Below are positions 6,013-57,365 of a stretch of 64,000 nucleotides of DNA, piece after piece. Position numbers and translations under genes: made by a program. How positions within the stretch are numbered: the stretch's first letter is position 1; every line of letters starts with the position of its first letter. The notes beneath the pieces were generated by a model. That model was not told the DNA's origin. It did no database searches and saw only the letters and a program-made list of their open reading frames with translations. The stretch lies in the IMG/VR virus record IMGVR_UViG_3300002835_000007, positions 1 through 64,000 of that record; one strand, written 5' to 3'.

Positions 6013-6138
6013 TGGAAGGTAGCCCAATTGGTAGAGGCAGCGGAATGCAAAAAGATTAATCTGTTTTAAAGATTAAGTTCAGCAATTTAAACGCTATTTA
6101 GGAACCGAAAAGTGTTAGTTCGAATCTAACCCTTCCGA
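6013..6138 (+). ncRNA. tRNA body with ~50-nt CAGCAA module inserted in the anticodon arm
   Basis: TGGAAGG/CCTTCCG acceptor, D arm, GTTAG-TTCGAAT-CTAAC T arm; insert TTAATCT/AGATTAA hairpin + GTTCAGCAA. Confidence 0.75.
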
Positions 6139-6446
6139 CAAAAGAAGAGTGAGCAGCATTAGCCAAGTTGGAACGAGTACCAGCGTGAAGGTCAAAAATA
6201 CTCGGCTCATGACTTCTGAAAAAAAGTTTGAAAAAAACTTGCAAATGTAAAATAAAGTTAGTACATTTGTAGTATAGAAAAAGTTCTTTGAAAAGTATTA
6301 GAAATGAGGGTGTTACATTCTTAAATTTCTTTAAAAAAGTTACTAAAAAACTTGACATTTGCTTAAAAATGTCGTATATTAGTAACATAAAAATTGGATT
6401 AATTATCATAAAATAAAAAAGTAAAAAAAAAAAGAAAAAAAAGAGT

Positions 6447-7126: not shown

Positions 7127-7267
7127 GGGTAAAAAGATTATTTCAGCAACCAAAAATTCAAGCCTTGTTAATGCCGTGGTCGTGGGTTCGAATCCCACAC
7201 TGTCCATGATAATGGGCGGTTAGCTCAGCTGGTTAGAGCACGTATGAAAAAAAGTTAATCTTGTCCC
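7127..7267 (+). ncRNA. circularly permuted tRNA-like RNA (T arm-acceptor-D arm) closed by CAGCAA stem
   Basis: AAGATTA(7134)/TAATCTT(7256); T arm 7182-7198; ACTGTCC(7199)/GGGCGGT(7214); D arm GCTC/GAGC. Confidence 0.8.
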
Positions 7268-7296: not shown

Positions 7297-7437
7297 GAGT
7301 AATTAAAAGATTGTTTCAGCAATTAAACTCAAAAATTGTATGGATAACAAGCGGTCTGGGTTCGAATCCCAGCATGTCCTAACAGAGGTGTGGGCGTGTG
7401 GTGTAATGGTAGCACAAAAAGAGCAATCTTGATACTC
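7297..7437 (+). ncRNA. second circularly permuted tRNA-like RNA closed by CAGCAA stem
   Basis: AAGATTG(7307)/CAATCTT(7424); T arm 7356-7372; CATGTCC(7373)/GGGCGTG(7392); D arm GTG-TAATGGTAG-CAC. Confidence 0.8.
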
Positions 7438-7441
7438 AAAT

Positions 7442-7519
7442 ATGGCGTTAGCTCAGCTGGTAGAGCACTGTTGGTTTTAACTGGCAGATGGGTCGTAGGT
7501 TTGAATCCTACACGCTGTA
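7442..7519 (+). pseudogene. aberrant tRNA (Lys-like loop, 7-bp anticodon stem)
   Basis: Normal D arm and GTAGG-TTTGAAT-CCTAC T arm; CTGTTGG-TTTTAA-CTGGCAG arm; weak acceptor. Confidence 0.6.
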
Positions 7520-7681
7520 CAATGTTTCTTTGTTTTATAAAACAAAGTGGTGGTAGTCTGGGGTGTTAAAACTCTCGGTCCCAAAAAAATAAGGTTGGTA
7601 ATTTACTGTAAAGCTATGGCTTCCTTCAAAAAAGTGGCACTATCGTTTGGTAGTGTCATTTTTTATTTGTACCTTTGTCAA

Positions 7682-10283: not shown

Positions 10284-12122
10284 ATGGAAAATGTTAATGG
10301 AGTACAAGGTGGTTTAGCGGCAAAATGGAATCGTTTGACCAAATTAAGTAAAATGTTAATTATGGGTGTTGGTTTAGCAATTGTTTTAGCAGTTGTGTAT
10401 ATGGCCGCACCAGGTTTAAGAGTTGCAGTGTCAAAAGAAATGAAAGCGTTAGCAATCAATTCTGACGATTTAAACAACGTAACTAAAGGTGCTGAATTAC
10501 CTTTACCATCTACGGAAGTGTCTAGTAACTTTGACGAAAGTAAGTTGATTAGAATAGCTGAGTACGCATGGAATGGTAACTCTGGTATGATTGTAGCAAA
10601 TGGTGGACCAAGAACAACTGAAGGGTCTCTTATGGAGGCTGCTGATGTAAACTTGGAAATCGTGCGACAAGATATGGTTGGTGGTTTACGTGATATGCAA
10701 ATAAAATTTGTTGATGAATTTAGCAAAGGTGTTGCTTATCCAAAATCACAAAAGTCAGCGTTTGCTGTATCTATCATGGGTGATGGTGTGCCTTTTTACA
10801 TTACAACTACTCAAAAAGCGTTAGATGAGAAGTTTGGTAAAGGTAAATATCACGTAGTTAATATCGGTGCAATCGGTTTATCATATGGGGAGGACAAATT
10901 AATTGGTCCAAAAGTATGGCAAGATAACCCACAAACACTTAGAGGTGCGGTTGTATCATCAGTAATCGGTGATGGTGACTGGGTAGTAGCTGTAAACTAT
11001 GCATCTGCGAATGGTATTCCAGTTAATCCAGACCCAACAACTTTTGATGCTAATGCATTGAACTTTGTACCGTCACAAGATGATGACTTTATCAACTCTG
11101 TAAAAGAATTGATTAAATCACAAAACACTGGATTTACTGTACCTTTGAAAGAAGTTAAAGATGGTAAATTGACTGGTAAGACAATCAACCATAAAATTGA
11201 TGGTGCAACAACATGGACTCCAGGTGATAAAATGGCTTTTGATGCGTTGACTGGGTTTACTGATGTTGTTACAACAAAAGATTTCGTTAACCAAATGGCT
11301 ACATCAATTATCGTAGTGAAAGAATGGGCGATACAACATGAAAAAGAAGTAACGAATATTTTGAAACAAACATATACTGCTTGTAACCAAATTAAACAAT
11401 ACGATAGATGGGCCCGTAAGGCTGCTGAATGTGTTGCAAAAACATACAACTTTGAAACTGCTGATTATTGGTACAAAATGTTCAAAGGACAAAAAGGTAC
11501 TAAAGGTGGTTTAGATTACAATATTGGTGGTACACGTGTATTTAACTATGCTGATGCTATGCAATACTACGGAATCACGGATGGTAATAACAGATATAAA
11601 GCGGTTTACAATCAAGTATCTATGTACTTAACTGACTTGAACCCATGTGGTTTCAACGAAACATGTAAAGATGGTGTTGTGCAATACGAAGATGCTGTTA
11701 ACTTATACTTCTTGAAATCTATTAGTGATGTTGATGCTGGAACTACTCAAAAGTTCAACTATGTTGAGAATAAAACTAAAGTGATGGCAGATGGACAATG
11801 GAACATTAGCTTTGCTACTGCAAGTACAACTATCCAAGGTTCTGAGAAAACGTTAGAGACTATCTACAACTTGTTAATTCAAGCTGAACAAACTAAATTG
11901 AAAGTGATTGGTCATACAGATAATGTTGGTAATCCACAATCTAATATGGTATTGTCTAGAGGTCGTGCTAACTCAGTTGTTGATTATTTGGTTAATCGTG
12001 GGATTCCTAAAGCACGTATTCAATTTGTGGATGGTTTAGGTGATACTAATCCAGTAGCTACAAATGCAACTGCGGCTGGTAAATCGAAAAACAGACGTGT
12101 AGAGATTACATTGTTACAATAA
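10284..12122 (+). CDS. ABC substrate-binding-like protein fused to OmpA C-terminal peptidoglycan-binding domain
   Basis: N-terminal TM; C-terminal GHTDNVG..N..LS..RA..V..YL...NRRVEI. Confidence 0.85.
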   Translation: MENVNGVQGGLAAKWNRLTKLSKMLIMGVGLAIVLAVVYMAAPGLRVAVSKEMKALAINSDDLNNVTKGAELPLPSTEVSSNFDESKLIRIAEYAWNGNSGMIVANGGPRTTEGSLMEAADVNLEIVRQDMVGGLRDMQIKFVDEFSKGVAYPKSQKSAFAVSIMGDGVPFYITTTQKALDEKFGKGKYHVVNIGAIGLSYGEDKLIGPKVWQDNPQTLRGAVVSSVIGDGDWVVAVNYASANGIPVNPDPTTFDANALNFVPSQDDDFINSVKELIKSQNTGFTVPLKEVKDGKLTGKTINHKIDGATTWTPGDKMAFDALTGFTDVVTTKDFVNQMATSIIVVKEWAIQHEKEVTNILKQTYTACNQIKQYDRWARKAAECVAKTYNFETADYWYKMFKGQKGTKGGLDYNIGGTRVFNYADAMQYYGITDGNNRYKAVYNQVSMYLTDLNPCGFNETCKDGVVQYEDAVNLYFLKSISDVDAGTTQKFNYVENKTKVMADGQWNISFATASTTIQGSEKTLETIYNLLIQAEQTKLKVIGHTDNVGNPQSNMVLSRGRANSVVDYLVNRGIPKARIQFVDGLGDTNPVATNATAAGKSKNRRVEITLLQ

Positions 12123-12139
12123 ACTAACATTATTTAATT

Positions 12140-12170
12140 AAAGTCCCTAACTTTGTTAGGGATTTTTTTT
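12140..12170 (+). terminator. intrinsic terminator
   Basis: AAAGTCCCTAAC-TTT-GTTAGGGATTTTTTTT. Confidence 0.75.
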
Positions 12171-12190
12171 GAACTTTAAAAAATAAAAAT

Positions 12191-12961
12191 ATGAAAAATT
12201 TAATTAAACCATTTCAAGAACTTAAAAGTACGTCAAGAGGTACAATCATGTTAGGTTGGTTAGTAGCTATACTTACATTTTGGACCTTGAATATGTTTGG
12301 AACATCACATATGTTTCCAACACCAACACAAGTTATCCATGGATTTGGTGACTTATGGGCTGAAGGATTAGTTGTTCACATAGTTAGTTCAATTGCGTTA
12401 TGTGCACATGCTGTATTCTTATCAGTGATTATATCATTGGTTATCGCATATTCAACAGCAATTCCAATTATGAAGCCAGTAGGTACATTTATATCTAAAT
12501 TAAGATATCTTCCATTGACTGGTATTGCTTTTTATTTAGCTATCATTATTAACGATGCTAGAAGTCTTCAAGTATGGGTGCTTGTAGTGTTCATGACAAC
12601 GTTTCTAACGACTTCTCTTATTCAAATGATACAAGATATCCCCAAAGAAGAATTGGACCACGCAAAAACGCTAGGATGCAATCGTTGGGAGATTTTATGG
12701 GAAGTAGTTATCAAAGGTAGATTAGATTACGTGTTAGAGTTGGTAAGACAAAACTTAGCAATTGTATGGATGATGCTTGTAACGGTTGAGTCTATATTAG
12801 CAGCAGCTGGTGGTATGGGATTCTTAATCAAAAATAGTGACAAGTTAGGTGACAATGGTAGAGTAATTGCATTACAAATTATAATTGTAGTTGTAGGGTT
12901 ATCATTGGACTTTATCATCACTAAATTACGTAAATTAATATTCAGATATTCAAATTATTAA
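12191..12961 (+). CDS. ABC transporter permease (TauC/SsuC-like)
   Basis: FPTP..V; EAA-loop-like DHAKTLGCNRW; WMMLVTVE...GMGFLI. Confidence 0.88.
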   Translation: MKNLIKPFQELKSTSRGTIMLGWLVAILTFWTLNMFGTSHMFPTPTQVIHGFGDLWAEGLVVHIVSSIALCAHAVFLSVIISLVIAYSTAIPIMKPVGTFISKLRYLPLTGIAFYLAIIINDARSLQVWVLVVFMTTFLTTSLIQMIQDIPKEELDHAKTLGCNRWEILWEVVIKGRLDYVLELVRQNLAIVWMMLVTVESILAAAGGMGFLIKNSDKLGDNGRVIALQIIIVVVGLSLDFIITKLRKLIFRYSNY

Positions 12962-12964
12962 GAC

Positions 12965-13786
12965 ATGAGTTATAGAGAATTAGATACAATATTATACGTT
13001 GATAAGATTAGCGTTGGGTATGAAGGAAAAACAATTCTTAAAGATATTTCAATCATTGAGAAAAATATAGTAAGAGATGGTCACGATTCCACTGGACAAA
13101 CAATTGCGGTGTTAGGTCGTTCTGGTAGAGGTAAATCTACATTGTTCAAAGCGTTGACTGGATTGGTTAAACCAATGTCTGGCCAGATTTTGATAAGTGA
13201 TATGGCTACAGAAGTTGCAGATGATGCAAAAATATTGGCTGAAGGTGATGTAGGGTTTGTTGACCAAAAATACACTTTGTTCAGACATAAAACAGTATAT
13301 CAGATTTGTCAATATGCATTAAGAAAAAGTAAAACGACAAAACAAGAGAAAGATAAGTTGATTACTGAGTTTTTAACTGAATGGGGTTTATTAGAACACA
13401 AAGATAAATACTCATGTGAGTTATCTGGTGGTCAAAGACAAAGAACTGCAATCATTGAGCAAATGTTATCATCTAAACATTTTATGATTTTGGATGAACC
13501 ATTCTCTGGATTGGACGTTGGAAACATTGAGAAAGTTAAAACATCTTTCCAAAAGATTTTGGATGCTGACGAATATAACACAATCATATTTTCAACACAC
13601 GATATCAGATTGGCTGCTGAATTGGCTGATAGTATTTATATTATTGGTAACCCAGAGGGTACAACTGAATATTCAACAGTCTTAAAACACTATGATTTAA
13701 AGAAAATGGGATTAGCTTGGACACCATATGGTGAGGGTCATAGAAAAGTGGTTGCTGACATAAAAGAAATATTATTAAAATCGTAA
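12965..13786 (+). CDS. ABC transporter ATPase (TauB/SsuB-like)
   Basis: GRSGRGKST, LSGGQRQR, ILDEPFSGLD, STHD. Confidence 0.93.
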   Translation: MSYRELDTILYVDKISVGYEGKTILKDISIIEKNIVRDGHDSTGQTIAVLGRSGRGKSTLFKALTGLVKPMSGQILISDMATEVADDAKILAEGDVGFVDQKYTLFRHKTVYQICQYALRKSKTTKQEKDKLITEFLTEWGLLEHKDKYSCELSGGQRQRTAIIEQMLSSKHFMILDEPFSGLDVGNIEKVKTSFQKILDADEYNTIIFSTHDIRLAAELADSIYIIGNPEGTTEYSTVLKHYDLKKMGLAWTPYGEGHRKVVADIKEILLKS

Positions 13787-15883: not shown

Positions 15884-15957
15884 AATAAAAGATAGCTTCA
15901 GCAATTTCACAACTATCAAACTTTTAATTTGAATCAGAAAATGCTATCTTGATTTAT
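15884..15957 (+). ncRNA. CAGCAA-stem RNA displaying a lone Lys(UUU) anticodon hairpin
   Basis: AAGATAGC(15889)/GCTATCTT(15943), TTCAGCAA, TCAAA-CTTTTAA-TTTGA 15916-15932; own promoter TACATTTG 15867. Confidence 0.7.
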
Positions 15958-16043
15958 TGGAGGGTGGCCGAGTGGTTAAAGGCGGCAGACTGTAAATCTG
16001 TTCTCGTAAGGGTACGGGGGTTCGAATCCCTCCCCTCCAACCA
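15958..16043 (+). tRNA. tRNA-Tyr(GTA)
   Basis: GCAGA-CTGTAAA-TCTGT; long variable arm; ACCA end. Confidence 0.96.
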
Positions 16044-16124: not shown

Positions 16125-16216
16125 CACGTGTTAACTAGGGTCGAGCCACATTTTGCCTCGGTTAACAATAGAAGAAAGAACCTAGAGGTGGCCGTGACTG
16201 TCTTTCTTCGAAATTT

Positions 16217-16348: not shown

Positions 16349-16420
16349 GCGAGAGTAGCTCAGTGGTAGAGCATCTGGTTACCAACCAGAGGGTCGTGGG
16401 TTCGAATCCCATCTCTCGCT
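16349..16420 (+). tRNA. tRNA-Gly(ACC)
   Basis: GCGAGAG/CTCTCGC-T Gly-type body; TCTGG-TTACCAA-CCAGA. Confidence 0.9.
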
Positions 16421-16428
16421 CAAAATAT

Positions 16429-16555
16429 GGGGGTGTTGAAATGTTAGATAAATCACATTCTGCCTTTTAGATTAAAGAATGTTTGCAGCAAAATCAAAAT
16501 TATTCACGCAAACTGTAAATTTGATAAAACGTTGGTGCAATTCCAGCCGCCCCCA
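16429..16555 (+). ncRNA. tRNA-like ends enclosing CAGCAA module and Tyr(GUA) anticodon hairpin
   Basis: GGGGGTG/CGCCCCC-A; ACATTCT/AGAATGT + TTGCAGCAA; CAAA-CTGTAAA-TTTG; GTTGG-TGCAATT-CCAGC. Confidence 0.7.
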
Positions 16556-16678
16556 CTAAAATAAAATTATAAAAAACTTAAAAAATAAAAACTATGAAAA
16601 ATTCTATCAACATTAAGCGAAAGATAAAACGATAAGGCACTCGGCCAAGCTGGTTACGAGTGTCAATGGAAAAAACAC

Positions 16679-56878: not shown

Positions 56879-57365
56879 AAGTTAATGAATAATTTATTTT
56901 AGATAAAATTGAAATTTGTCCATTTTAAATTAGGAATATCTAAATAAGATTCTTACATTTGTCAAATCTAATTAAAACTTTATATCATGTCAAGAAAGAA
57001 AAAAACATTTGATGTATTAGCATTTAAAGAATACGTCAACATTCAACTAGCAAGAACTGATGAACATGCAACAGAAGACTTTAAATGTGGTTTGTCTGTC
57101 GCTTTGGGAGAAGTGTTGCATCGTACTGGTAACTATAATGGGTTTACCCATTTGTATTGGAACGAAATTGGTTGGCAAGAGTGGAGAACTATTGGTAAAG
57201 AAACCGAAGTTTGGGAAGAAAAGAAATTGTTTATCTACGGAACACCAGACAGCAAATATAAAGGAAGTAGATACGCTTTAAGATATTATTAATGATAATA
57301 GGGGACGCTGAAAACCTAGACAGAGTAGGCAAATAATAAAAGTTAAATAAAAAAAAAAGAAAAAA

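What the first reader, a model, noticed from the sequence alone, without database searches (positions are those of the whole stretch)
16429..16555. Fifth family member: tRNA-like ends + CAGCAA module + Tyr(GUA) anticodon hairpin
Seen in sequence: a GGGGGTG/CGCCCCC-A acceptor and T-like arm with no D stem. Inside are ACATTCT/AGAATGT + TTGCAGCAA and CAAA-CTGTAAA-TTTG, whose loop is identical to that of tRNA-Tyr at 15958. The different stem sequence with retained pairing supports a real structural motif. Established knowledge: tRNA-Tyr is the target of the PtuAB effector of retron Ec78. Inference: the family presents assorted anticodon loops (Lys, Tyr, and Asn-like TTGTTAA at ~7165).
Basis: partly seen in the sequence, partly recalled or inferred. 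Interest (0 to 1): 0.7.

Follow-up and report, generated by a model that had tools for sequence, protein, structure and literature searches.

The report
Phage Y-RNA-like tRNA-Tyr mimic
A conserved 127-nt phage RNA is shaped like a tyrosine tRNA but carries an extra "hairpin + CAGCAA" handle. It belongs to a large, apparently undescribed family of tRNA mimics that travels with a divergent Ro60-like protein, so it is most likely a phage Y RNA.

Summary
Window 16429-16555 has a 7-bp acceptor stem, a 5-bp T arm, a 7-bp hairpin (P1) followed by UUGCAGCAA, and a 4-bp stem with a tRNA-Tyr loop (CUGUAAA); it has no D stem. In 15 distinct homologues 98.5% of pair cells are paired and 7 pairs show compensatory changes. 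RNAalifold returns the same 23 pairs. The loop is invariant.

It is one of five units in the window. These belong to a family found in at least 90 phage tRNA clusters. The shared signature is a P1 helix (57 different sequences) followed by (U)UCAGCAA. It is grafted onto tRNA-like bodies in circularly permuted, non-permuted and minimal gene layouts. Rfam has no model for it; the only resemblance is a sub-threshold YrlA hit.

The module co-occurs with a DUF2828/DUF7788 gene in 20 of 22 contigs that carry units. It sits in that gene's 5' leader in about 25 of 26 T4-like loci. A model of the protein matches Ro60 over its full length.

Best reading: a phage Y-RNA-like tRNA-Tyr mimic for a divergent Ro60 homologue. 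Binding, the RNA's ends and its function are untested.

The parts
16429..16435 (+). Acceptor-stem 5' strand GGGGGTG. It starts 7 nt after tRNA-Gly(ACC).
   Evidence: It pairs with 16548-16554. Pair 6 covaries (U-G, A-U, U-A).
16436..16454 (+). Single-stranded D-loop-like stretch TTGAAATGTTAGATAAATC with no D stem. The conserved core is TTRAAATGKTA.
   Evidence: invariant columns. The L283 homologue has GG here together with a canonical T loop.
16455..16482 (+). P1 hairpin: ACATTCT (16455-16461), a loop of variable length (16462-16475), AGAATGT (16476-16482). It is the family's P1 helix closed by a loop. The G after the first strand is invariant.
   Evidence: 4 of 7 pairs have double changes. 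One search gives the family consensus for P1 and its flanks.
16483..16491 (+). Conserved single-stranded motif TTGCAGCAA, the family signature (U)UCAGCAA. It is the candidate contact site for the Ro60-like protein.
16492..16508 (+). A-rich linker of variable sequence.
16509..16523 (+). Anticodon-like stem-loop CAAA / CTGTAAA / TTTG (U33, G34 U35 A36 = Tyr, A37).
   Evidence: The loop is invariant in 15 homologues. The stem covaries (A-U to U-A in 4 sequences, A-U to G-C in 1).
16524..16530 (+). Short variable region ATAAAAC. There is no long variable arm.
16531..16547 (+). T arm GTTGG / TGCAATT / CCAGC. The T loop has G at position 55.
   Evidence: The same T loop occurs in a canonical class II tRNA-Tyr in L402.
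16548..16555 (+). Acceptor-stem 3' strand CGCCCCC plus discriminator A. No CCA is encoded.
   Evidence: Metatranscriptome contigs end at about 16552-16560.
6013..6138 (+). Sister unit, non-permuted. It has an acceptor stem, a D arm, a P1 hairpin (TTAATCT 6056-6062 / AGATTAA 6070-6076), TTCAGCAA at 6078-6085 and a T arm. There is no clear anticodon loop.
   Evidence: Rfam tRNA, 34 bits, with a 61-nt insertion.
7134..7263 (+). Sister unit A, circularly permuted. Order: P1 5' strand AAGATTA, TTCAGCAA, Asn-like loop, T arm, acceptor hairpin ACTGTCC/GGGCGGT, D arm, P1 3' strand TAATCTT.
   Evidence: The acceptor hairpin covaries (CAGACT/AGTCTG in L019). YrlA hit at 39.3 bits.
7307..7431 (+). Sister unit B, circularly permuted. 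P1 is AAGATTG/CAATCTT and the acceptor hairpin is CATGTCC/GGGCGTG. The loop triplet varies among orthologues.
15889..15951 (+). Minimal sister unit in the leader of the tRNA-Tyr operon. P1 is AAGATAGC/GCTATCTT, followed by TTCAGCAA and a Lys-like stem-loop TCAAA/CTTTTAA/TTTGA.
   Evidence: The same minimal layout sits in the leaders of the Ro60-like gene.

Best explanation
Window 16429-16555 encodes a stable non-coding RNA of about 127 nt. It derives from a phage tRNA-Tyr and has become a Y-RNA-like tRNA mimic.

Shown:
- It has a conserved acceptor/T-arm minihelix and a conserved Tyr anticodon stem-loop.
- In place of the D arm it carries the family module: a 7-bp P1 helix followed by single-stranded UCAGCAA.
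- The same module is grafted onto tRNA-like bodies in many phages, in permuted, non-permuted and minimal gene layouts.
- The module travels with a gene for a divergent Ro60 (TROVE + vWA) homologue, annotated only as DUF2828/DUF7788, and often sits in that gene's 5' leader.

Inferred:
- The RNA is cut out of the tRNA-operon transcript by RNase P and 3'-end enzymes, because of its tRNA-like top half.
- P1 + UCAGCAA binds the outer face of the Ro60-like ring. It would play the role that the 5'/3' stem and the GNCGAA/CGAA motif play in YrlA and in the phiLo Yrl RNAs.
- The tRNA-Tyr-like half then brings a tRNA-recognising partner, or tRNA-like substrates, to the Ro60-like protein. The partner could be an exoribonuclease such as PNPase (as in RYPER complexes) or an enzyme or nuclease that reads the GUA anticodon loop. 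This would serve tRNA surveillance or counter-defence during infection.
For: Structure:
- 98.5% of cells paired, 7 pairs with compensatory changes, 0/500 shuffles.
- RNAalifold gives the same 23 pairs.
- The CUGUAAA loop is invariant in all 15 homologues.

Family:
- Of 130 matches to the pattern TTCAGCAA...GTTCGAATC, about 75 have a perfect 7-bp P1 partner, against about 4 expected by chance.
- There are 97 distinct permuted units with 57 different P1 helices. All four Watson-Crick pair types occur at the inner P1 positions.
- The acceptor hairpin covaries, which excludes a 'dimeric tRNA' reading.
- The only Rfam resemblance is YrlA at 39.3 bits, E 2e-7.

Partner protein:
- Units lie directly upstream of a DUF2828+DUF7788 gene. 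This holds in 20 of 26 T4-like loci by strict criteria and in about 25 of 26 when motif variants are counted, against 0 of 26 on the opposite strand. It also holds in G003 and L131.
- The gene is present in 20 of 22 viral contigs where a unit was seen. These include three complete genomes, two of which (G001, G002) are 362-kb relatives of this phage. It is present in only 2 of 12 large contigs where no unit was seen.
- An AlphaFold model of the protein matches Ro60 structures over both domains. The top 13 Foldseek hits are all Ro60 (E 1e-7 to 8e-4). The second aligner (VIA-align) gives Z 11.7-14.8 over 340-389 residues. A MIDAS motif DVSGSM is present.

Precedent: phage Ro60 genes with adjacent Y-RNA-like RNAs are known (PMC4201824, PMC12135203).

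Expression: contigs carrying this element occur in at least 5 lake metatranscriptome runs. In 3 of the 4 runs laid the downstream flank is not covered.
Against: - There is no direct evidence that the protein binds the RNA. The complex-prediction job was not folded.
- The window's own 206-kb record contains no DUF7788 or TROVE gene. It is only 58% complete. In the complete relative G002 the gene lies in the part this record lacks, so its presence here is inferred by synteny.
- In the lineage closest to this phage the protein gene has no unit in its leader (1 of 73). Adjacency is therefore lineage-specific.
- The Rsr-binding motif of YrlA (GNCGAAN0-1G) is absent. In this element P1 is an internal hairpin, not a stem formed by the RNA's 5' and 3' ends.
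- Co-occurrence could be partly phylogenetic, since large tRNA-rich phages may carry both. The negative contigs were examined only in the fetched pieces.
- The protein model has middling confidence (mean pLDDT 66).
- The RNA-seq support is low-depth assembled contigs, and DNA carry-over is not excluded.
Confidence: 0.62

Rival explanations
1. Stand-alone decoy for a host anticodon nuclease. The RNA would present a tRNA-Tyr anticodon arm on a tRNA-like body to soak up, or be cleaved instead of, tRNA-Tyr by a retron-PtuAB-like or colicin-E5-like nuclease. It would act independently of any Ro60-like protein.
For: - The GUA loop is invariant while its stem covaries.
- The phage and its complete relative also carry a canonical tRNA-Tyr, so this element duplicates rather than completes the tRNA set.
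- Other units show Lys (UUU), Asn (GUU), His (GUG) and Asp (GUC) loops, all known nuclease targets.
- Phage tRNA-Tyr and tRNA-Lys are proven counter-defences (PMC11555353, PMC11464382).
Against: - It does not explain the conserved P1 + UCAGCAA module, its occurrence without any tRNA body, or its tight link to the Ro60-like gene.
- In a large subgroup the loop triplet drifts freely.
- Known counter-defence works by supplying functional or resistant tRNAs, not decoys.
- No nuclease or host is known for this phage.
Confidence: 0.15
2. A working but structurally aberrant tRNA-Tyr. After RNase P and 3' processing and CCA addition it would be charged by TyrRS and used in translation, with the P1 hairpin standing in for the long variable arm of bacterial tRNA-Tyr.
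For: - It has free acceptor ends, G1-C72, A73, G34 U35 A36 A37 and a canonical 12-bp acceptor/T stack.
- Its T loop is shared with a canonical class II tRNA-Tyr in L402.
- Permuted relatives encode N-CCA right after the acceptor 3' strand (L402, L408, L207, L213 and others).
Against: - It has no D stem, only a 4-bp anticodon stem, and about 55 nt inserted between the acceptor stem and the anticodon arm.
- A canonical tRNA-Tyr is present in the same cluster and in the complete relative.
- Many family members have capped acceptor stems or no anticodon arm at all, so the family's common function cannot be decoding.
- The His-type member lacks the C73 expected of bacterial tRNA-His (the identity rule is from general knowledge).
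Confidence: 0.1
3. A cis-acting processing or stability element of the tRNA operon, or a decaying tRNA-Tyr pseudogene, with no function in trans.
For: - Minimal units lie between tRNAs, in operon leaders and before terminators.
- The element sits between tRNA-Gly and tRNA-Lys.
Against: - Conservation with compensatory changes runs across homologues down to 77% identity and in different genomic contexts.
- A pseudogene would not keep four helices and an invariant loop.
- A pure spacer role does not explain the embedded complete tRNA-like bodies or the link to the Ro60-like gene.
Confidence: 0.06

Closest known systems
YrlA-type bacterial and phage Y RNAs bound by Ro60/Rsr (Rfam RF02553; Chen et al. 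2014, PMC4201824)
   Same: - A tRNA-mimicking module (T arm, acceptor stem, D arm or D loop) is joined to a helix plus a short conserved single-stranded motif.
- The gene-level partner is a TROVE + vWA ring protein.
- The RNAs are often encoded just upstream of that gene.
- Units A and B in the window have exactly the YrlA permuted topology and give the only Rfam resemblance (39.3 bits).
   Different: - The motif is (U)UCAGCAA, not GNCGAAN0-1G.
- The partner is a DUF2828/DUF7788 protein that the Pfam TROVE model does not detect.
- The break in the tRNA body lies beside an intact anticodon arm (26/27 or 43/44), not within it.
- This element is not permuted: P1 is an internal hairpin and the acceptor ends are free.
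- The RNAs lie inside tRNA clusters and come in several copies per genome.
- Scores are far below the Rfam threshold.
Yrl1/Yrl2 and phiRo60 of Thermus phage phiLo (PMC12135203; PDB 9KOP, 9L5Y)
   Same: - A phage-encoded Ro60 homologue has two Y-RNA-like RNAs just upstream of its gene. The T4-like loci here show the same arrangement (two tandem units in the leader).
- phiRo60 is the best structural match of the DUF2828 protein model.
   Different: - The phiLo RNAs are stem-bulge-stem RNAs with a CGAA motif and are not described as carrying anticodon arms.
- Protein sequence identity is about 15%.
- Binding and PNPase recruitment were shown there and are only inferred here.
Phage T4 stable RNAs rnaC and rnaD (species 1 and 2 RNAs) in the T4 tRNA cluster
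   Same: - They are small stable RNAs of unknown function, co-located with phage tRNA genes.
- rnaC ends in a T arm plus an acceptor-like 3' strand.
- rnaD ends in ACCA.
   Different: - No P1 + CAGCAA module or anticodon-like arm is recognisable by eye. This was not tested with a model.
- T4 was not checked for a DUF2828 gene.
Phage tRNAs that defeat tRNA-cleaving defences (T5 tRNA-Tyr against retron Ec78 PtuAB, PMC11555353; T5 tRNA-Lys against PARIS, PMC11464382)
   Same: They are encoded in a phage tRNA cluster and have a Tyr (GUA) or Lys (UUU) anticodon arm.
   Different: Those are canonical, functional tRNAs that replace cleaved host tRNAs. This RNA lacks a D arm, carries the extra module, and duplicates a canonical phage tRNA-Tyr.
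Circularly permuted genes for tRNA-like RNAs (two-piece tmRNA; permuted tRNA genes of Cyanidioschyzon)
   Same: - The same RNA architecture is encoded in permuted and non-permuted gene orders.
- Some permuted units keep N-CCA followed by a short spacer before the 5' acceptor strand, as permuted tmRNA genes do.
   Different: - There is no tag reading frame and no G3-U70.
- There is no bulge-helix-bulge motif.
- No ligase or splicing endonuclease was found in this record.

Membership tests
Y RNA / YrlA (RF02553) | tRNA-like module with T arm, acceptor stem and D arm | tested here: inconclusive
   The element has an acceptor stem and a T arm but only a D-loop-like strand. Sister units A and B have all three and align to the YrlA core.
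Y RNA / YrlA (RF02553) | The RNA's 5' and 3' ends pair to form the Ro-binding stem (permuted tRNA topology) | tested here: not met
   In 16429-16555 the ends form the acceptor stem and P1 is an internal hairpin. The feature is met in units A and B and in 97 permuted relatives.
Y RNA / YrlA (RF02553) | Conserved Rsr-binding motif GNCGAAN0-1G near the 5' end (PMC4201824) | tested here: not met
   The motif is absent. The conserved motif next to the helix is (U)UCAGCAA.
Y RNA / YrlA (RF02553) | Score at or above the Rfam gathering threshold (69 bits) | tested here: not met
   The element gives no YrlA hit. Unit A scores 39.3 bits and unit B 18.1 bits. No YrlA hit appears at gathering threshold in 18 related loci.
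Y RNA / YrlA (RF02553) | Encoded with or near a Ro60 (TROVE) gene | tested here: inconclusive
   Pfam TROVE is absent from the own record and from 3 complete related or unit-bearing genomes. A structurally Ro60-like DUF2828/DUF7788 gene co-occurs in 20 of 22 contigs and is adjacent in several lineages. It was not found in the 58%-complete own record.
Y RNA / YrlA (RF02553) | Physical binding to Ro60 and tethering of an exoribonuclease | not testable with these tools
   The complex-prediction job was not folded.
Canonical tRNA (RF00005) | Cloverleaf with D arm; detectable by ARAGORN or the Rfam tRNA model | tested here: not met
   Neither tool calls it, and there is no D stem.
Canonical tRNA (RF00005) | 7-bp acceptor stem stacked on a 5-bp T stem with a 7-nt T loop; anticodon loop with U33 and a purine at 37 | tested here: met
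   The T loop is UGCAAUU rather than UUCRANY, and the anticodon stem has only 4 bp.
Canonical tRNA (RF00005) | Aminoacylation and use in decoding | not testable with these tools
   Indirect evidence only: a canonical tRNA-Tyr is already present.
tmRNA (RF00023) | G3-U70 in the acceptor stem, and a tag reading frame with a resume codon and a stop | tested here: not met
   The element has G3-C70. The frame starting at GCA runs through the T arm without a tag-like stop (read from the sequence). The tmRNA score is 9.7 bits against a threshold of 47.
Ro60 / TROVE proteins (for the inferred partner, DUF2828+DUF7788) | Helical-repeat TROVE domain followed by a vWA domain with a MIDAS motif | tested here: met
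   The AlphaFold model matches Ro60 structures over residues 13-476. The top 13 Foldseek hits are all Ro60, and the second aligner (VIA-align) gives Z 11.7-14.8. DVSGSM is present. Model pLDDT is only 66. The Pfam TROVE HMM does not hit.

The most novel reading that the evidence does not exclude
Large phages carry a modular Ro60-like ribonucleoprotein system. One divergent Ro60 homologue (DUF2828/DUF7788) is loaded, through a common P1-UCAGCAA handle, with a set of interchangeable tRNA-mimic adaptors. Each adaptor would imitate a particular tRNA in its acceptor stem and anticodon loop (Tyr here; Asn and Lys in other units of this window, His and Asp in relatives). That would let the phage recognise, protect, repair or destroy specific tRNAs, or trap the host nucleases that cut them. 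Some adaptors would mature from circularly permuted genes into two-piece tRNA-like RNAs with genuine CCA ends.
Probability: 0.2. Interest if true: 0.9.

Novelty: new variant of a known kind. Interest (0 to 1): 0.78.

Why it matters
- It gives a testable function to DUF2828/DUF7788, a very abundant phage protein family of unknown function. More than 8000 relatives were scored in one search. The proposal is that it is a Ro60 homologue with its own class of Y RNAs.
- It explains recurrent unannotated gaps in phage tRNA clusters that tRNA finders and Rfam miss.
- It is a natural case of one RNA architecture encoded in permuted, non-permuted and minimal forms.
- It links Ro60/Y-RNA biology to phage tRNA biology. 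tRNA cleavage and phage tRNAs are currently recognised as a major front of phage-host conflict.
- It suggests cultured systems for experiments. BLAST found a partial match to one unit in Synechococcus phage BUCT-ZZ01, and found Methylophilales phage Melnitz to be related to a unit-bearing contig.

Tried and rejected
- **tmRNA or mini-tmRNA.** There is no G3-U70 and no tag frame, and the scores are very low.
- **Dimeric tRNAs mis-scored as YrlA.** Rejected because the acceptor hairpin strands are complementary and covary.
- **Intron-containing or permuted pre-tRNA needing splicing.** No RtcB, RNA ligase or CCA-adding enzyme is in the record. Many acceptor hairpins carry conserved or tetraloop caps even in phages whose tRNAs all encode CCA.
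- **Units filling gaps in the phage tRNA set.** In the complete relative G002 they duplicate canonical Tyr and Phe tRNAs.
- **'Ser identity conserved' for unit B.** Withdrawn after more orthologues showed GUA as well.
- **Self-cleaving ribozyme, K-turn, boxA-like antiterminator, seed of a base-pairing sRNA.** All were considered from sequence only. TTGCTGAA sites in genes look like a codon-usage effect. None has support.
- **T4 rnaC/rnaD as members.** No module is visible by eye.
- **Literature.** Searches for the motif, for permuted phage tRNAs and for DUF2828 found nothing relevant.
- **Cultured phages.** BLAST of the element against 50,697 phage records gave no match.
- **Protein-RNA complex prediction.** The job was not folded and is not evidence either way.
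- **Single-sequence MFE fold.** It finds the acceptor stem and P1 but not the T arm or the anticodon arm (z = -2.2). The comparative structure is preferred.
Full report
**1. What is there**

The window is the left part of a 206-kb, 30% G+C fragment of a freshwater phage, estimated 58% complete. Complete 362-kb relatives exist (G001, G002).

The first 17 kb hold 19 tRNA genes. Between tRNA-Gly (16349-16421) and two tRNA-Lys genes lies 16429-16555. Reading the sequence gives, in order:

| Coordinates | Feature |
|---|---|
| 16429-16435 | acceptor 5' strand GGGGGTG |
| 16436-16454 | 19-nt D-loop-like strand, no D stem |
| 16455-16482 | P1 hairpin ACATTCT / loop / AGAATGT |
| 16483-16491 | TTGCAGCAA |
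| 16492-16508 | A-rich linker |
| 16509-16523 | CAAA / CTGTAAA / TTTG |
| 16524-16530 | ATAAAAC |
| 16531-16547 | T arm GTTGG / TGCAATT / CCAGC |
| 16548-16555 | acceptor 3' strand CGCCCCC, then A |

The CTGTAAA loop is identical to the anticodon loop of the canonical tRNA-Tyr at 15958-16043. ARAGORN and Rfam do not call the element.

**2. Is it more than chance?**

Pattern scans of viral and metagenome contigs recovered homologues. Fifteen distinct sequences, down to about 77% identity and in different flanking contexts, were aligned (A1).

- On the four-helix structure, 98.5% of cells are standard pairs, against 40-57% when the partners are slid.
- Seven pairs show changes on both sides: P1 ACATTCT/AGAATGT to ATATCTT/AAGATGT; anticodon stem CAAA/TTTG to CAAT/ATTG and TAGA/TCTG; acceptor pair 6 U-G to A-U.
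- No shuffle out of 500 reaches the observed values.
- RNAalifold, run without my structure, returns the same 23 pairs.
- The CTGTAAA loop, the G following the first P1 strand, and CAGC/AA are invariant or nearly so.

A single-sequence fold is only mildly better than shuffles (z = -2.2). The case therefore rests on the comparative evidence.

**3. The family**

The module 'helix + (T)TCAGCAA' occurs five times in the window and nowhere else in the 206 kb.

Units at 7134-7263 and 7307-7431 turned out to be circularly permuted tRNA-likes. Their order is: P1 5' strand, TTCAGCAA, linker, anticodon-like hairpin, variable loop, T arm, acceptor 3' strand, short loop, acceptor 5' strand, D arm, A-rich linker, P1 3' strand. 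Two observations establish this reading:
- The acceptor hairpin covaries between relatives (ACTGTCC/GGGCGGT against CAGACT/AGTCTG).
- P1 differs between the two units by a compensatory pair (AAGATTA/TAATCTT against AAGATTG/CAATCTT).

This is the topology of YrlA, and it gives the only Rfam resemblance (39.3 bits, E 2e-7, threshold 69).

The units at 6013-6138 and 16429-16555 are the non-permuted versions. In them P1 is closed by a loop and the acceptor ends are free. The unit at 15889-15951 is a minimal version (P1, TTCAGCAA, a Lys-like hairpin). It lies just after what looks like a Bacteroidota-type promoter. That promoter assignment rests on my knowledge of the TTG...TAnnTTTG consensus.

A scan for TTCAGCAA followed by a canonical T loop hit more than 120 viral contigs.
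- About 75 of 130 matches have a perfect 7-bp P1 partner roughly 100 nt downstream, against about 4 expected.
- A structural parser found 97 distinct permuted units with 57 different P1 helices.
- The three outer P1 pairs are mostly A-U, G-C, G-C.
- The four inner pairs use all Watson-Crick types with almost no mismatches.
- P1 is preceded on its 3' strand by an A-rich run and followed by G-U-U.

All 18 loci tested with Rfam are phage tRNA clusters, and only tRNA models reach threshold there.

Variants within the family:
- The break falls on the other side of the anticodon arm (43/44).
- Only a T arm is present.
- There is no tRNA part at all.
- N-CCA is encoded right after the acceptor 3' strand.
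- The acceptor is capped by a conserved loop (TTGGTC) even though all tRNAs of the same phage encode CCA.

**4. The anticodon-like loops**

The loops keep U33 and a purine at 37. In the lineage of the element studied, GUA is invariant. It is also kept in permuted Tyr-type relatives (L402, L408). GUU is kept in the unit-A lineage across very different P1 and acceptor sequences.

In the large 'AGGTTCT' subgroup, and in orthologues of unit B, the triplet changes freely while everything around it is constant. The subgroup shows GAA, UAG, GUA, GCG, ACG, AUG, GGA and GCA; unit B orthologues show GGA, AGA, GUA and UGA.

In the complete relative G002 the Tyr-type and a Phe-type unit coexist with canonical tRNA-Tyr and three tRNA-Phe genes. 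The units therefore do not complete the decoding set.

**5. The partner**

In T4-like contigs a T-arm-only unit lies immediately upstream of the ribosome-binding site of a 475-aa gene. That protein matches only Pfam DUF2828 and DUF7788. More than 8000 relatives were scored in one search.

*Adjacency.*
- Twenty of 26 loci of this lineage have a strict P1 + CAGCAA unit in the 400 nt upstream.
- Five of the six others (L534, L545, L541, L548, L559) have variants of the motif, and the sixth (L542) has a canonical motif with a partner too close for my filter. That gives about 25 of 26.
- The count is 0 of 26 on the opposite strand.
- Many loci have a second unit further upstream. This is the arrangement reported for Yrl1/Yrl2 and phiRo60 of Thermus phage phiLo (PMC12135203).
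- A unit also precedes the gene in G003 and in L131.
- It does not precede the gene in the lineage closest to this phage (1 of 73).

*Co-occurrence.*
- A DUF7788 gene is found in 20 of 22 viral contigs in which I saw a unit, including all complete ones.
- The two exceptions are fragments, 42% and 58% complete. The second is the window's own record.
- The gene is found in 2 of 12 large contigs in which the fetched piece showed no unit.
- In G002 the gene lies about 9 kb upstream of the first tRNA cluster. That region is missing from our record, whose start corresponds to about 38 kb further in.

*Fold.* An AlphaFold model (mean pLDDT 66) has a helical-repeat N-terminal domain and an alpha/beta C-terminal domain with the MIDAS motif DVSGSM.
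- Its top 13 Foldseek matches in the PDB are all Ro60 proteins over the full length: phiLo phiRo60, D. radiodurans Rsr, Xenopus and human Ro60 (E 1e-7 to 8e-4).
- The second aligner (VIA-align) gives Z 11.7-14.8 over 340-389 residues. Matches to the vWA domain alone score below that.
- The Pfam TROVE model does not detect these proteins. This is probably why the link has gone unnoticed.

**6. Expression**

Contigs from at least five lake or freshwater metatranscriptome runs contain the element or a near-identical relative at depth 2-5.
- In three of the four runs laid the conserved downstream flank is not covered.
- Contigs end at about 16552-16560.
- Upstream leader sequence is included.

This is weak support for a discrete RNA. 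These are assembled contigs, and DNA carry-over cannot be excluded.

**7. Interpretation**

The best-supported reading is that the element is a phage Y-RNA-like tRNA mimic. A tRNA-Tyr-derived body carries the family's P1-UCAGCAA handle, and the partner of that handle is a divergent Ro60 homologue.

*Shown:* the structure, the family, the three gene topologies, the genomic link to the protein, and the protein's Ro60-like fold.

*Inferred:*
- processing by RNase P and 3'-end enzymes;
- binding of the handle to the protein, by analogy with the stem and GNCGAA/CGAA motif of YrlA and the Yrl RNAs (PMC4201824, PMC12135203);
- the downstream function.

By analogy with Ro60-Y RNA-PNPase complexes, the tRNA-like half would recruit a tRNA-recognising factor or tRNA-like substrates. 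The invariant GUA loop argues that something specific for the tRNA-Tyr anticodon arm reads it.

tRNA-Tyr and tRNA-Lys are proven targets of defence nucleases (PMC11555353, PMC11464382). It has no direct support here, and on its own it does not explain the module or its link to the Ro60-like gene.

**8. Comparison and novelty**

The element works like a YrlA-type Y RNA but fails several membership tests:
- a different conserved motif;
- no Rfam-level score;
- a non-permuted topology in this copy;
- a partner outside Pfam TROVE.

I therefore file it as a new variant of a known kind (Ro60/Y-RNA systems with tRNA-mimicking RNAs), not as a YrlA member.

I found no description of the RNA family, or of DUF2828 as a Ro60 homologue, in the searchable literature. 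That library lacks most subscription-journal papers, so prior description cannot be excluded.

Noticed in passing
window 7442-7520: A tRNA-like gene with an 8-nt anticodon loop (ARAGORN 'anticodon' UUUA; Rfam tRNA 40.5 bits). Its homologue in L019 has UUAU, and L019 also carries a tRNA with anticodon UUA, which would read the stop codon UAA. This may point to frameshift or stop-codon suppressor tRNAs.
   Followed up: no
window 16126-16216: The spacer between tRNA-Thr and tRNA-Gly contains a long conserved hairpin (GAAGAAAGA...TCTTTCTTC). It is also present in the 63%-identity relative L125. No function is known.
   Followed up: no
window 16594-16635: Just downstream of the element lies a 13-codon, very basic micro-ORF (MKNSINIKRKIKR). 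It is kept in L122, and in L125 it reads MKNLNNKLKKKKR.
   Followed up: no
window 16640-16670 and 6150-6190: Similar D-arm-like hairpins (...GCCAAGCTGGTTACGAG... and ...GCCAAGTTGGAACGAG...) follow two of the units. They may be further small structured elements.
   Followed up: no
L216, L218, L233, L235, L130, L132, L187 and others (the 'AGGTTCT' units); window 7307-7431: Close relatives differ almost only in the acceptor-hairpin stem and in the three 'anticodon' bases. The D arm, T arm, anticodon stem and the capping loop TTGGTC stay constant. This could be neutral drift or diversifying selection on the two main tRNA identity sites.
   Followed up: partly
L402, L408, L435, L207, L213, L244, L269, L140, L149: Some permuted units encode N-CCA and a 4-20-nt spacer between the acceptor 3' and 5' strands, as permuted tmRNA genes do. 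They may mature into two-piece tRNA-like RNAs with a real CCA end.
   Followed up: partly
L450 (G002:C1:84475-88017): In the complete relative G002 the Ro60-like open frame is only about 357 aa, starting mid-protein. An opposite-strand 270-aa ORF lies immediately beyond its start. I guessed, from the sequence alone, that this ORF is a GIY-YIG-type homing endonuclease. The gene may be interrupted.
   Followed up: no
L402 (reverse strand, about 1040-1140): A canonical class II tRNA-Tyr there has the same unusual T loop (UGCAACU, G at position 55) as the element. This suggests the element descends from this kind of phage tRNA-Tyr.
   Followed up: no
window 57298-57331: An Rfam DUF805b RNA match sits just at the gathering score (35.8 against 35.6 bits).
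   Followed up: no
window 10284-13786: The phage carries an OmpA-domain protein plus an ABC-transporter permease and ATPase pair between the two tRNA clusters. These are auxiliary genes unusual for a phage.
   Followed up: no
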